A stretch of 63,015 bases of DNA from Stylophora pistillata (taxonomy: Eukaryota): assembly GCF_002571385.2 (NCBI RefSeq), contig NW_019218029.1, positions 164,573 to 227,587 on the forward strand. Direction: 5' to 3'. The translations under genes and the position numbers were made by a program. Numbering within the stretch: position 1 is the stretch's first letter; each line of letters begins with the position of its first letter. Shown in pieces: positions 20,105 through 40,111 of the stretch. Under the pieces are notes generated by a model, which was not told where the DNA came from, ran no database searches, and worked only from the letters and a program-made list of their open reading frames with translations.

Positions 20105-21502
20105 ATGGAACCAGCTGACGGTCCGAGCGTAGAAACGGGCAGTAAAGAAAGAGAGCTAATAGAAAAGCTACTCGATTCTAGCGAGAGTCGAGAGGAAGAA
20201 GATTTTGACCGTGTCGTGTTCTCGAGCAGCTGGGATGAAGTCACTTGTGGATGGAAACGCACAGCGCCAAACGTTCGATATATTTCATCCGCTGATCGAA
20301 AGAAGAAGGCTAAAGACAAATGTTGGCGAAATAGCCCGGATTCGGAAAGTCATTACGCTAAAGTGAAGCGTCTCGCTGGAATGATCACGAATTCGAATTC
20401 GAACGTAAATAGCGTCACTGAAATAAACAAGGTAAAAACAGGAGGAACGTGGCCAGGAAATAAGACTGTGAGAACAAATATGCGGAATTTTCAAAACGCT
20501 GATGTGCTATCTTATGACAGCCCTTGCTGGAGATACATTATTGATCCTCGAACGTTGGAATATGTCGAGAGAACTCCGCTTCAAGTGCTCAGAAACATGA
20601 CTGCCTCTCACAAATATCCGAACCAAACGCTTCTTCTTGAGAACGGTGGCATGATCACTTTTCAAGAGACCAGCAATGGAAGCATTTCTATCAGCGATCC
20701 GGCGCAGACCTTTGATCGTCGTCTCCTGGAGAACTTAGATCTGAAAGGAGAGTTCTTTGTTGATAAGCGCAGGTTTCCTTTCTGTTTCGAGCCTTCCGTT
20801 CGTGTTCCGTTGATCACCCAATACCGAACCGAAGATCATAAAATCAAAGTGATTCACGCAGTAGCTGCACGGAAGGAAAACCCAGTGGTTTCATTCTGCG
20901 ATTTATGTCAATTGAGACCTCAGGATATCGTCAAACCTTCCTCAAAAGTTGAGATTTCTACGAACAGTTCAACGGAGCTTAAGCCTCTGCAGAAGATTAC
21001 ACCGGCACAGCGGCAAACTGCTGATGACAGCATCTTGGCAAGTAAAGTTTTGGGGTCACACTCTAAAAAATTGGACGATTCCACTAGTTCAAAAGGGTCC
21101 AAAAAAACGAAGGATCAGAGGGTTGTGAGCCAAAAAAGAAAATCTGGCCCGGTAGGGGAGGGTAAGTTGGACTGGCTGCCAATCACCAGGAACACCATTG
21201 GATACCCATATCCTTCAACAGTTGTGAGTCAGCCTCATGGTAAATTTGCTGAAAGGTCATCAGCTGGTTTCACCAAGGCATTCTCTTTACCAAAGTGCAA
21301 CAAGAAAGGAAAGAAACTGACTCTGAGTGAGGCTGCAAATATAGTGCCAAGTACGGGAAAGCTGGATGATGCACTGAAAAAACTGTCCCAAGAGATGGAC
21401 AGAAAGGTGAAGAAAGGCCTCAGCTTTTCTGAGCCCTTGTTGCCACGTGTTTCTGGAACAAAACTGGAAGTCCCAGCTTTGGCTAATATATGTGACAAAT
21501 GA
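20105..21502 (+). CDS. C16orf46: Single-exon 465-aa protein, probable C16orf46 (DUF4529) orthologue
   Basis: Long ORF. The motif LLDSSE...FSSSWDEVTCGWKRTAP resembles recalled human C16orf46 LLDVSD...GTGWEEAVQGWGRTSP, and the C-terminal PLLPRVSGTKLEVP resembles PVLPSLTVSRVIIP. It lies tail-to-tail with ATMIN, as in human. Confidence 0.7.
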   Translation: MEPADGPSVETGSKERELIEKLLDSSESREEEDFDRVVFSSSWDEVTCGWKRTAPNVRYISSADRKKKAKDKCWRNSPDSESHYAKVKRLAGMITNSNSNVNSVTEINKVKTGGTWPGNKTVRTNMRNFQNADVLSYDSPCWRYIIDPRTLEYVERTPLQVLRNMTASHKYPNQTLLLENGGMITFQETSNGSISISDPAQTFDRRLLENLDLKGEFFVDKRRFPFCFEPSVRVPLITQYRTEDHKIKVIHAVAARKENPVVSFCDLCQLRPQDIVKPSSKVEISTNSSTELKPLQKITPAQRQTADDSILASKVLGSHSKKLDDSTSSKGSKKTKDQRVVSQKRKSGPVGEGKLDWLPITRNTIGYPYPSTVVSQPHGKFAERSSAGFTKAFSLPKCNKKGKKLTLSEAANIVPSTGKLDDALKKLSQEMDRKVKKGLSFSEPLLPRVSGTKLEVPALANICDK

Positions 21503-22920
21503 TGTCAGAGAATGCCATAAATCATACTTCATCAGGCATGCAAAATGTTAGAACTTCCACAGCATCCAAGCAGACATTTAAGTATAAGCTATAATAATAA
21601 ACATCTTCGCATGCATTACTCTACTACCCCTAAGCCTACAAGTTCATGGGAAAAAAGCTTGATCACTATATACCACTGACATAGGAGTAAAGCTTGTCAT
21701 TATGATCTGTATTTATTTCCTTGATAAGTTGTTAATTTCTTTTTAGTTAAAATGTAAAAGTTTCAAGTCATTTCTGATGATGAATAATACAACACCTCAG
21801 TCAGAACTGAATTTATAATCTTGGTTGCTGATTTCTGTACATCATTTCTGAAGTTTACAATGCTATAAACTGAGTGTTTTTAATTTTAGAAAATTTAAGT
21901 TAGTACTGTCTTTGTTAGGGTTAGGAATCATTGACAAAGAAATGAACAATGTTAATAGATGATTCTTTTTTCTATTACAGATACTTCAGTTTTAACATTA
22001 GTAGTACTCAACAAAATCAGGAAATTTATTTCATTGGTGTACACATTCAGCTCAATCCTCAGTTTTTAAATAATGACAAATGCATAGTTCTCTATTTTTC
22101 AATAAAAGAAAAGCAACTTCAATCAGTTAATATTTTGAATTTTTTGTCACTTGATCAGCTCTGTGAAGTGCTTTTTTCTTACAAAGTTATTAGTAAATAA
22201 TAACAAACTGGAGGGTCAGGTGAGTGAAGAGGAAAGAAAAGCTGAAAATCTCACAGTGCTTTACAAGGGAGTTAGAATTACATAGTAAGAATACTTACCT
22301 CACACTGGCATCTCCAGAGTTTGAGTACCAATTCCATCATCACATAGTTTGAGGTTTGCTTTTCATCTTTTGTAGGGAACATGTGGCATGATGGTTATTG
22401 TGCCAAACTTCAAACCCAGAGGGCTATTTGGAACTCTGAAATTCAGTCTTGGAGAACGTATAACTTTGTCACAAAGGCATATTTTCATGCTGTTTTGGTG
22501 ACAAAATTTTGCTTTGTCTAGTTTGAGGTCATAGTTTTTCAAACCAGAAAAAAATTGTGTTAAACTGGAAGCTATCCTTGGTATTTCAGCTTGTGATGAT
22601 TTTAGTGCATGACATATCATTTTCTTCTTTACTGGTGAACCCTTGAACTCCCAGAAGTGATTAACATGTACCTTCTCCCTATGATATCCATACATGCTCC
22701 AGTAAACAGGTAATGAGAATACTCACACTTATCAGGTAAAAGTTGACATAATGTAACAACAAATTCTTGTGACTAATGTACAAGAAATTGTGTAGCAGCT
22801 AGAGGAAAGAAATTAACAATCAGATCTTGGGAGTTGAAGAATTAATAATATAACCCACAGAAACAGATCTATTTTATTTTGCAATTTTATTGCATTAAAG
22901 GTACAGTATGCTACAAACCA

Positions 22921-39300: not shown

Positions 39301-40111
39301 GTTAGGATGAGACTGGTGATCTGAAAAAAGCCCAAATGCAATAAACTCTCTCAATTAACTGAAACCTCCAGTGCACAGAAAAAGCTCCGAGGGATCCCTC
39401 AGATACTCAATTGGACCTCCTATTTTTCTTTTTCTTTCTTTCAGTTTTCCTTTGTTTTCTTGTATAGTAAGGCATTGATAAGTGTACAACAAAGAAATTA
39501 AAATCAAACCTAGGATCGATGAAATGGAGCCATGTAAATTATAAGCTTATTTATATTTAATAAACTTTAAGTGCTAAATTTTTTTCGAGCCTTTTTTCAG
39601 TTTATTGCAATATGTACATTTATCGAGTGTTAATGCGTTCATGTTAAAAAAATAGCTCTTATCTTTAAAACAGTATACTGAACAATTCGCAAAAATATGA
39701 AAGTTTGATTCGAATTGACACACAGCTGATCGATCACACAGTTCCAGTTTATAATTATTTTTGTTTTAATTTCTGCCGTTGATTTAGACTAAGAGTACAA
39801 ATTTTGTATTTATTTAGACCAATGGAATCTATTAACATCAAATAAAAACCAAAAAACATTTATATCAGTCCAACAGGTTACCTAAGAGAAACGAACTTAC
39901 AGATTAGATCCATTAGGGCAACATGTTCGGCCGTCACATTTTTGTCAAAACACTTCTTCAGAATGCGATTGACGAAACTTTCCTTCGTTCCTTCTGTATC
40001 CAGCACACCTTCTTTCAAAAATCCATGTTTAATAAGTCCCTCAAGTAGTTCTTCTTTGTTGAATTTCTTGAATAATTTGCACAAATCTTTGATGAGAGGG
40101 TTGTCCGCCAT
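33393..40111 (-). CDS. CENPN: Centromere protein N, ~345 aa
   Basis: Exons 40111-39901, 39320-39264, 38019-37937, 37164-36997, 36112-36011, 35364-35292, 34226-34093 and 33602-33393 total 1038 nt. Motifs VALMDLIY..HP..KKWTVY, LWTRI, VFIIYYPNSEYVF, FGTNLQPKLERIEFK and FEGSSVLEGIKNL...PLPSYL match CENP-N/Chl4. Confidence 0.85.
36501..36813. mobile_element. hAT-like MITE with TTTCAAGGAC subterminal repeats
   Basis: TIRs CAGGGTTCATACAC...GTGTACGAACCCTG; no clean TSD. Confidence 0.6.

What the first reader, a model, noticed from the sequence alone, without database searches (positions are those of the whole stretch)
20105..40111. Ancient CENPN-ATMIN-C16orf46 microsynteny shared with human 16q23.2
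Seen: CENPN and ATMIN are co-directional with CENPN upstream, and a 465-aa ORF converges on ATMIN's 3' end. Recalled: human has CENPN(+), ATMIN(+), C16orf46(-) in this arrangement. Inference: the apparent orphan ORF is a cnidarian C16orf46 (shared LLD-S...W[DE]E..xGWxRTxP motif), a family usually seen as vertebrate. The trio would then have stayed linked since the cnidarian-bilaterian split, with RPP40 lying between CENPN and ATMIN here.
Basis: partly seen in the sequence, partly recalled or inferred. Interest (0 to 1): 0.8.

Follow-up and report, generated by a model that had tools for sequence, protein, structure and literature searches.

The report
Coral C16orf46-like gene beside ATMIN
A 465-residue coral gene that sits tail-to-tail with ATMIN belongs to an unnamed animal-wide protein family that is very probably the invertebrate counterpart of the uncharacterised human gene C16orf46, and the pairing with ATMIN is also found in sea anemones, soft corals, a feather star and a sea cucumber.

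Summary
On the window, a single-exon 465-aa ORF (20105-21502, +) converges on ATMIN/ASCIZ (22921-26238, -). RPP40 (26317-31650, +) and CENP-N (33393-40111, -) follow.

The ORF is a real, conserved gene. It has 40 hexacoral homologues, and a profile search of 1.84 billion proteins finds relatives in octocorals, four echinoderm classes, amphioxus, two molluscs and an annelid. All are annotated as uncharacterised.

Similarity to C16orf46 (Pfam DUF4529) is specific but below Pfam's cut-off. DUF4529 is the only Pfam family that recurs. It always matches the N-terminal signature module (profile positions 27-101), in six hexacoral proteins including this ORF's N-terminal fragment, and in a mollusc and an annelid (12.7-23.6 bits, cut-off 27).

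The tail-to-tail pairing with ATMIN recurs in Nematostella, Oculina, an octocoral, a crinoid and a holothurian. A pig study lists C16orf46, ATMIN and CENPN consecutively. Orthology and an ancestral ORF-ATMIN pair are therefore well supported.

Two things remain untested. CENP-N linkage outside this window could not be checked. No vertebrate C16orf46 sequence could be obtained for a direct profile comparison. Function remains unknown.

The parts
20105..21502 (+). Single-exon gene for a 465-aa, basic (pI 9.5), Ser/Lys-rich protein; probable cnidarian orthologue of C16orf46
   Evidence: ORF. 40 hexacoral homologues at E 0 to 9e-57. Bilaterian relatives at E 2e-8 to 7e-4 against 1.84 billion proteins. 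Composition. An exact-match contig in a public sequencing run, 99.55% identical over window 20076-22078 without gaps.
20147..20284 (+). N-terminal signature module (residues about 15-60): LLxxSE, an acidic stretch, then WxE...GWxxTxPNxxY. This is the part that matches Pfam DUF4529 positions 35-92
   Evidence: Window fragment 20135-20314 has DUF4529 as its only Pfam hit, E 0.032, 13.8 bits. Orthologues score 12.7-23.6 bits in the same profile region. hhalign of the hexacoral profile against the bilaterian profile gives 99.3% probability, E 9e-21, over this module.
20495..20575 (+). Second conserved block (residues 131-157): VLSYxxPCWRxIIDPxTxxYxxR. It starts the only moderately confident folded stretch of the structure model
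   Evidence: Alignments A1, A3, A4. W142 and Y153 are nearly invariant or invariant across 61 sequences. AlphaFold pLDDT is 70-80 for residues about 140-215 only.
20978..21016 (+). Third conserved block (residues 292-304): LKPLxKITPxQR, which contains a conserved Thr-Pro site
   Evidence: Conserved from corals to echinoderms, amphioxus, molluscs and the annelid. Conservation scan.
21431..21475 (+). C-terminal conserved block (residues 443-457): LLPxVSGxKLxVP
   Evidence: P447 is nearly invariant in 61 sequences. Bilaterians end LLPGVSGxKxxVP....R[IV]L.
21503..22920 (.). 1418-bp spacer between the two facing stop codons (tail-to-tail junction). It holds poly(A)-signal hexamers on both strands and a repeat copy at 22646-22851
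   Evidence: No sequence conserved with the Oculina spacer was detected.
22921..26238 (-). ATMIN/ASCIZ gene. Exons at about 25942-26238, about 25330-25546 and 22921 to about 24180, the last carrying 11 TQT motifs
   Evidence: Pfam C2H2_ASCIZ 43 bits and C2H2_ASCIZ_4th 28.5 bits, both above cut-off. Splice sites read from the sequence. Last exon and TQT count. tblastx/tblastn to Nematostella and Oculina ATMIN.
26239..26316 (.). 78-bp head-to-head gap between the ATMIN and RPP40 start codons; presumed bidirectional promoter
   Evidence: Sequence reading. The same head-to-head arrangement occurs in Nematostella and Oculina.
26317..31650 (+). RPP40 (RNase P/MRP 40-kDa subunit), at least 8 exons
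   Evidence: tblastx to loci whose called gene carries PF08584. Window exons 31483-31641 and 30572-30715 score 53.4 and 35.2 bits against PF08584.
33393..40111 (-). CENP-N gene. First exon 39881-40111, internal exon within 36946-37197, last exon within 33393-33614; other exons not mapped
   Evidence: Colinear sub-threshold Pfam CENP-N hits on three exon pieces: 11.9, 10.9 and 20.2 bits.

Best explanation
The 465-aa ORF is a genuine intronless gene. It belongs to a pan-eumetazoan but unannotated protein family that is most likely the invertebrate counterpart of vertebrate C16orf46 (Pfam DUF4529). Its tail-to-tail position next to ATMIN is an ancestral gene pair that predates the cnidarian-bilaterian split. 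In this coral the neighbourhood still also contains CENP-N, as in mammals. RPP40 is an anthozoan-wide insertion or association.

Shown: the gene, its family, the N-terminal module shared with DUF4529, and the recurrent ATMIN pairing.

Inferred (protein): it is a basic, Ser/Lys-rich, mostly disordered and probably nuclear factor. It would act through a few short conserved modules: the N-terminal acidic-helix plus WxE...GW...PNxxY module, a small beta-rich region after PCWR, a Thr-Pro block, and the C-terminal LLPxVSGxK block. These would serve as binding or phosphorylation interfaces.

Inferred (pair): it has persisted mainly because the two 3' ends lie close together and are moved as one block, possibly with shared 3' regulation. 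A functional link to ATMIN's DNA-damage/DYNLL1 role is only a hypothesis.
For: - Gene reality and family: 40 hexacoral homologues. The profile search finds 39 proteins at E<=1e-3 among 1.84 billion, and some named cluster members are in Paramuricea, Antedon, Asterias, Amphiura, Holothuria, Branchiostoma, Haliotis, Lottia and Owenia. hhalign of cnidarian against bilaterian profiles gives 99.3%, E 9e-21. Four sequence blocks are conserved end to end.
- DUF4529 link: 5 of 22 hexacoral proteins hit PF15032, best E 8.4e-5, and no other Pfam family recurs. N-terminal fragments score Nematostella 3.2e-5, Oculina 0.014, Haliotis 0.068, Owenia 0.026 and the window 0.032. All fall on profile positions 27-101. 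None of the 25 unrelated peptides from this window hit DUF4529.
- Synteny: the family gene (+) converges on ATMIN (-) in Nematostella, Oculina, an octocoral, Antedon (ATMIN finger exon tblastn E 7e-21; TQT-rich last exon) and Holothuria. In the octocoral, RPP40 lies on the other side, so the pair was inverted as one block.
- Mammals: pig gene order PKD1L2, GCSH, C16orf46, ATMIN, CENPN, CDYL2 (PMC12189728). Human C16orf46 maps to 16q23.2 (PMC13429901).
- Protein nature: pI 9.5, 11% Ser, 10% Lys, an RKKK stretch. AlphaFold mean pLDDT is 54.7, with only residues about 140-215 at 70-80.
Against: - The window ORF gives no full-length Pfam hit. Its best fragment scores 13.8 bits and the best orthologue 23.6 bits, all under the 27-bit cut-off.
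- Echinoderm and amphioxus members give no DUF4529 hit at all.
- C-terminal fragments give no hit.
- The cnidarian profile did not retrieve any DUF4529-positive (vertebrate) protein at E<=1e-3.
- No vertebrate sequence was compared directly.
- ATMIN is not within 10 kb of the family gene in Asterias, Amphiura, Haliotis, Lottia or Owenia. Any constraint on the pair is therefore not universal.
- CENP-N linkage was seen only in this window.
Confidence: 0.77

Rival explanations
1. The invertebrate family and vertebrate C16orf46 share only a short N-terminal module, through domain sharing or convergence, and are not orthologues. The position next to ATMIN in mammals is then a coincidence.
For: All DUF4529 hits cover only profile positions 27-101 of 406 and stay below the gathering score. 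C-terminal pieces give nothing. Deuterostome invertebrate members, which should be closest to vertebrates, give no hit.
Against: The same tail-to-tail partner, ATMIN, is found in five cnidarian genomes counting this window and in two echinoderm classes, and ATMIN is C16orf46's immediate neighbour in pig. With about 20-25 thousand genes, chance adjacency of a given pair is of the order of 1e-4 per lineage. The family also has the right length (about 350-590 aa) and a single copy per genome where examined.
Confidence: 0.12
2. The orthology is right, but the linkage carries no function. A tightly packed pair, and a nearby CENP-N, simply escaped breakage in slowly rearranging genomes.
For: The pair is absent within 10 kb in an asteroid, an ophiuroid, two molluscs and an annelid. 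No conserved non-coding sequence was found in the spacer between this coral and Oculina. Spacer length scales with genome, from 0.95 kb in the octocoral to 9.9 kb in Holothuria.
Against: The pair survived as a unit through an inversion relative to RPP40 between octocorals and hexacorals. It also survives in echinoderms despite 6.7-9.9 kb spacers. Retention in Cnidaria, Ambulacraria and mammals is more than most gene pairs show. That last point rests on general knowledge of metazoan microsynteny and was not tested here.
Confidence: 0.45
3. The ORF is a chance open frame, a cnidarian orphan, or a transposon-derived sequence.
For: The full-length ORF has no Pfam domain. It has no introns.
Against: It is conserved in 40 hexacoral proteins, with 59 invariant columns in the 22-sequence alignment A1. 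It has relatives in five phyla, a single syntenic copy per genome and no other copy in the window.
Confidence: 0.01

Closest known systems
Vertebrate C16orf46 (Pfam PF15032, DUF4529)
   Same: The N-terminal module (LLxxS, acidic stretch, WxE..xGWxxTxP) aligns to DUF4529 profile positions 27-101. Protein size is similar. It is the immediate neighbour of ATMIN, with CENP-N just beyond ATMIN. Function is unknown in both.
   Different: It scores below Pfam's gathering cut-off. The coding sequence is a single exon in every invertebrate examined. The extra conserved blocks (PCWRxIIDPxTxxY, LKPLxKITPxQR, LLPxVSGxK) could not be checked in vertebrates here. No database names the invertebrate proteins as C16orf46 homologues.
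Ancient metazoan microsynteny blocks (conserved neighbouring gene pairs shared by cnidarians and bilaterians)
   Same: Unrelated genes are kept adjacent in the same relative orientation across phyla.
   Different: This is a convergent (3'-to-3') pair rather than the better-known bidirectional-promoter or regulatory-bystander arrangements. One partner was not recognisable as an orthologue by standard annotation, so the pair would have escaped orthology-based synteny screens. That last point is inference.
ATMIN/ASCIZ
   Same: The window gene has the ASCIZ-type C2H2 fingers and a C-terminal cluster of 11 TQT motifs. By established knowledge of ASCIZ, TQT is the DYNLL1/LC8-binding motif type.
   Different: None noted. 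This is an ordinary orthologue. It serves here as the syntenic anchor, not as the novelty.

Membership tests
C16orf46 / Pfam DUF4529 (PF15032) | Score at or above Pfam's gathering cut-off (27 bits) against PF15032 | tested here: not met
   Full-length window ORF: no hit at E<=10. Window residues 11-70: 13.8 bits, E 0.032. Best orthologue (Nematostella N-terminal 110 aa): 23.6 bits, E 3.2e-5.
C16orf46 / Pfam DUF4529 (PF15032) | N-terminal signature module colinear with the family profile | tested here: met
   All hits fall on profile positions 27-101 and on the same module of the query, in six hexacoral proteins (counting the window fragment), Haliotis and Owenia. DUF4529 is the only recurrent Pfam family.
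C16orf46 / Pfam DUF4529 (PF15032) | Reciprocal best match, or a profile-profile match, to vertebrate C16orf46 sequences | not testable with these tools
   Three word-index searches and the one exhaustive search returned no DUF4529-positive protein.
C16orf46 / Pfam DUF4529 (PF15032) | Similarity over the rest of the protein, including the C-terminus | tested here: inconclusive
   C-terminal 80-aa fragments of nine family members gave no Pfam hit, but the block is short and HMMER's filters drop weak matches.
C16orf46 / Pfam DUF4529 (PF15032) | Genomic position: immediate neighbour of ATMIN, with CENP-N on ATMIN's other side | tested here: met
   Window: ORF (+), ATMIN (-), RPP40 (+), CENP-N (-). 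Pig order: C16orf46, ATMIN, CENPN (PMC12189728). Mammalian strand orientation comes from memory only.
ATMIN/ASCIZ | ASCIZ-type C2H2 zinc fingers | tested here: met
   PF24757 at 43 bits (cut-off 25) and PF24761 at 28.5 bits (cut-off 24), searched exon by exon.
ATMIN/ASCIZ | C-terminal cluster of TQT motifs | tested here: met
   11 TQT motifs in the last exon.
CENP-N (PF05238) | Match to the CENP-N/CHL4 profile | tested here: inconclusive
   Three exon pieces hit colinear profile segments at 11.9, 10.9 and 20.2 bits, each below the 25-bit cut-off. The joined model was deliberately not searched.
RPP40 (PF08584) | Match to the Ribonuc_P_40 profile | tested here: met
   Two exons score 53.4 and 35.2 bits, cut-off 24.
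Ancient conserved gene pair (microsynteny) | The same two orthologues adjacent in the same relative orientation in at least two phyla | tested here: met
   Cnidaria: the window, Nematostella, Oculina and an octocoral. Echinodermata: Antedon and Holothuria. Not found within 10 kb in Asterias, Amphiura, Haliotis, Lottia or Owenia.

The most novel reading that the evidence does not exclude
The C16orf46-family gene and ATMIN form a functionally coupled unit that has been kept tail-to-tail for more than 600 million years because the two act in, or are co-regulated for, the same pathway: ATMIN's DNA-damage/replication-stress and DYNLL1 control. This would give the orphan human gene C16orf46, whose overexpression radiosensitises cells (PMC13429901), its first mechanistic context.
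Probability: 0.15. Interest if true: 0.7.

Novelty: new member of a known kind. Interest (0 to 1): 0.5.

Why it matters
C16orf46 is one of the remaining human genes with no known function, and annotation treats it as restricted to vertebrates. Suppose the family defined here (corals, anemones, octocorals, echinoderms, amphioxus, molluscs, an annelid) is its invertebrate branch. The gene is then an old animal gene with four sharply conserved short modules, which points directly at the residues to mutate. It also becomes testable in tractable invertebrates such as Nematostella.

The conserved convergent pairing with ATMIN gives a concrete hypothesis for its pathway. It also shows that orthology-based synteny screens miss pairs whose fast-evolving partner is not recognised as an orthologue.

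By itself, one more conserved gene pair between cnidarians and bilaterians is not surprising, because many are known.

Tried and rejected
- Word-index protein searches with the ORF, with the hexacoral profile and with a 36-sequence family profile returned only family members and no vertebrate protein.
- The exhaustive HMMER search reached bilaterians, but none of the 29 distant hits scanned is DUF4529-positive.
- Pfam scans of C-terminal fragments gave nothing.
- The AlphaFold2 model built on 61 sequences is poor (pLDDT 54.7, pTM 0.26). I ran no fold search because the matches would be meaningless.
- The PDB profile search found no relative; the only hit was noise at E 0.72.
- The amphioxus locus is not on record, so chordate synteny could not be read.
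- The third, unnamed subgroup of relatives could not be assigned to a taxon.
- No conserved non-coding element was found in the ORF-ATMIN spacer against Oculina.
- Literature searches for DUF4529, for ATMIN with microsynteny, and for ATMIN, CENPN and synteny found nothing.
- No Pfam files exist in the script sandbox.
- I rejected the chance-ORF, orphan and transposon readings.
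Full report
**What is in the window.** The region holds four genes.
- A 465-codon ATG-to-stop ORF lies at 20105-21502 on the plus strand.
- ATMIN/ASCIZ faces it on the minus strand. Its first exon (ATG at 26238, donor near 25942) hits Pfam C2H2_ASCIZ at 43 bits. Its second exon (about 25330-25546) hits the ASCIZ 4th finger at 28.5 bits. Both are above the curated cut-offs. Its long last exon (22921 to about 24180) carries 11 TQT motifs.
- The two stop codons are 1418 bp apart.
- RPP40 starts 78 bp from the ATMIN ATG on the plus strand (26317) and runs to 31650. 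Two of its exons score 53.4 and 35.2 bits against Ribonuc_P_40.
- CENP-N follows on the minus strand, from its ATG at 40111 down to a stop at 33393. Three exon pieces hit the CENP-N profile colinearly at 11.9, 10.9 and 20.2 bits.

The joined models of ATMIN, RPP40 and CENP-N were not built or searched. The single N letters at 27036 and 39068, and the longer N runs elsewhere, were left as they are. No contig that I take for human was met, and no human sequence was used.

**The ORF is a real gene with a wide family.**
- The word-index search found 40 homologues at 39-88% identity (plus its own exact match at 100%). The three named species are Oculina patagonica, Nematostella vectensis (LOC5518517) and Actinia tenebrosa. 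All are annotated as uncharacterised or hypothetical and carry no precomputed Pfam domain.
- The 22-sequence alignment A1 has 59 invariant columns.
- I searched 1.84 billion representative proteins with a profile of A1. It gave 39 proteins at E<=1e-3.
- Cluster look-ups name several of these:
  - the octocoral Paramuricea clavata;
  - the echinoderms Antedon mediterranea, Asterias amurensis and A. rubens, Amphiura filiformis and Holothuria leucospilota;
  - amphioxus (Branchiostoma floridae C3XU81);
  - the molluscs Haliotis asinina and Lottia gigantea;
  - the annelid Owenia fusiformis.
- A third subgroup of unnamed proteins could not be assigned to a taxon.
- hhalign of the hexacoral profile against a 12-sequence bilaterian profile gives 99.3% probability, E 9e-21, over the N-terminal module.
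- Four blocks are shared along the whole length:
  - an N-terminal LLxCSE, acidic stretch, then WxE...GWxxTxPNxKY;
  - (VLSYxxP)xWRxx[IV][DE]PxT[YF]xY;
  - LKPLxK[IV]TPxQR;
  - a C-terminal LLPxVSGxKxxVP, which in bilaterians is followed by R[IV]L at the very end.
- In every locus fetched, the coding sequence is a single exon: gene length equals three times the product length plus a stop.

**Relation to C16orf46/DUF4529.**
- The full-length window ORF has no Pfam hit.
- Five of the 22 hexacoral proteins hit PF15032, best E 8.4e-5. No other Pfam family is hit by more than one member.
- Following the operators' advice to search domains apart, I scanned N-terminal fragments by reference. Results were Nematostella 23.6 bits (E 3.2e-5), Oculina 14.9, Owenia 14.0, Haliotis 12.7 and window residues 11-70 at 13.8 bits (E 0.032, its only hit). 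Every one aligns to DUF4529 profile positions 27-101.
- None of the 25 unrelated peptides from this window hit DUF4529.
- It stays under the 27-bit gathering score. It is absent for the echinoderm and amphioxus members and for C-terminal fragments.
- No tool returned a vertebrate C16orf46 sequence. Because it had no reference, the decisive profile-profile and reciprocal tests were left out.
- From memory only, the human protein also ends in an LP...V..-type block followed by RIL. That is a lead, not evidence.

**Synteny.** The family gene (+) is followed by ATMIN (-), tail to tail, in:
- Nematostella, with a 1.2-kb spacer and RPP40 head-to-head with ATMIN beyond it;
- Oculina;
- an octocoral contig, with a 0.95-kb spacer and ATMIN exons confirmed by Pfam and tblastn;
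- the crinoid Antedon, with a 6.7-kb spacer, where the neighbour's finger exon matches coral ATMIN at E 7e-21 and its 929-aa last exon is TQT-rich;
- the sea cucumber Holothuria, about 9.9 kb away, where the neighbour carries C2H2_ASCIZ.

In the octocoral, RPP40 lies on the other side, head-to-head with the family gene. The ORF-ATMIN pair was therefore inverted as one block relative to RPP40 between the two anthozoan subclasses.

No ATMIN was found within 10 kb in Asterias, Amphiura, Haliotis, Lottia or Owenia.

For mammals, a pig association study lists PKD1L2, GCSH, C16orf46, ATMIN, CENPN and CDYL2 consecutively (PMC12189728). Human C16orf46 is placed at 16q23.2 (PMC13429901). The human strands, CENPN (+), ATMIN (+) and C16orf46 (-), are my recollection.

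With roughly 20-25 thousand genes, chance adjacency of a named pair is of the order of 1e-4 per lineage. Repeated adjacency in two cnidarian subclasses, two echinoderm classes and mammals therefore argues strongly for common ancestry of the arrangement, and so for orthology.

CENP-N linkage outside this window could not be tested, because the 10-kb flanks end before it.

**What the protein probably is.**
- It is basic (pI 9.5) and rich in Ser and Lys, with an RKKK stretch.
- AlphaFold2 on 61 sequences gives mean pLDDT 54.7. Only residues about 140-215, a small beta-rich region after the PCWR block, reach 70-80, and a few helices appear elsewhere.
- No solved structure is related.
- I infer a largely disordered, probably nuclear protein that works through its short conserved modules.
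- The literature calls C16orf46 uncharacterised and places it in the cytosol and nucleoplasm. One 2026 study reports that the unedited protein slows proliferation and radiosensitises oesophageal carcinoma cells (PMC13429901).
- A functional tie to ATMIN, the ATM-interacting DYNLL1 regulator, is attractive but unproven.

**Verdict.**
- It is corrected on the point that the family is not vertebrate-restricted.
- It is left open on whether CENP-N stayed linked in other lineages.
- Novelty is a new, divergent set of members of a known but uncharacterised family, plus one more ancient microsyntenic pair.
- Interest is moderate.

Noticed in passing
window 26238-26317: The ATMIN and RPP40 start codons are head-to-head and only 78 bp apart, so the promoter must be shared or the transcripts must overlap. 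The same head-to-head pair exists in Nematostella and Oculina. In an octocoral (L005 5760-8562) RPP40 instead sits head-to-head with the C16orf46-like gene.
   Followed up: partly
window 40111-40435 and onward to about 44400: CENP-N is head-to-head with a ThiF-family E1 enzyme gene that looks like UBA2/SAE2. The start codons are 323 bp apart, and ThiF hits occur at 40435-40626 and 44117-44422.
   Followed up: partly
window 16028-18366 (-): A gene with two MYND zinc fingers and a DUF4470 domain lies at 17683-18366. Downstream on the same strand is a 398-aa ORF (16028-17224) without a significant Pfam hit. It is the upstream neighbour of the C16orf46-like gene.
   Followed up: partly
window 2139-3647 (+): A collagen-repeat gene with a CTHRC1-type C-terminus is interrupted by an N run (2254-2622). 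A CTHRC1-like gene is also the upstream neighbour in Oculina (L002 4848-6370), so the synteny with Oculina extends on this side.
   Followed up: partly
window 22646-22851 and 31155-31358: Two inverted copies of a repeat of about 200 bp are 77% identical. One lies in the ORF-ATMIN spacer and one inside RPP40. A second repeat family gives near-identical 85-aa ORFs at 5893-6150 and 15025-15282.
   Followed up: no
P0101 and P0102 (Desmophyllum pertusum OS493_009954 and OS493_009955): In the Desmophyllum annotation the orthologue appears split into two adjacent gene models of 184 and 180 aa. This suggests a frameshift or a mis-split model there.
   Followed up: no
P0053, P0055, P0056, P0059, P0060, P0064, P0067, P0068, P0071, P0072, P0074: A third subgroup of relatives has a shortened motif: WDE, one residue fewer, then xW instead of GW, followed by PMCxY. 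These proteins are Asn/Lys-rich. They come only from unnamed assemblies, so the taxon is unknown; my guess is medusozoans.
   Followed up: partly
L009 (Logan contig from run SRR10968435), bases 2004-2026: The public contig that matches window 20076-22078 at 99.55% ends in Illumina adapter sequence. Its end is therefore not a transcript end.
   Followed up: yes
window 19930-20060: A possible short 5' UTR intron lies just upstream of the ORF, with a donor-like AAG|GTAATG near 20017 and an acceptor-like TTCCGCAG| near 20058. This would make the coding sequence, but not the whole gene, intronless.
   Followed up: no
window 11397-12521 (-) and 13382-13777 (+): Two sizeable ORFs (374 and 131 aa) have no Pfam hit. 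They may be remnants of mobile elements.
   Followed up: no
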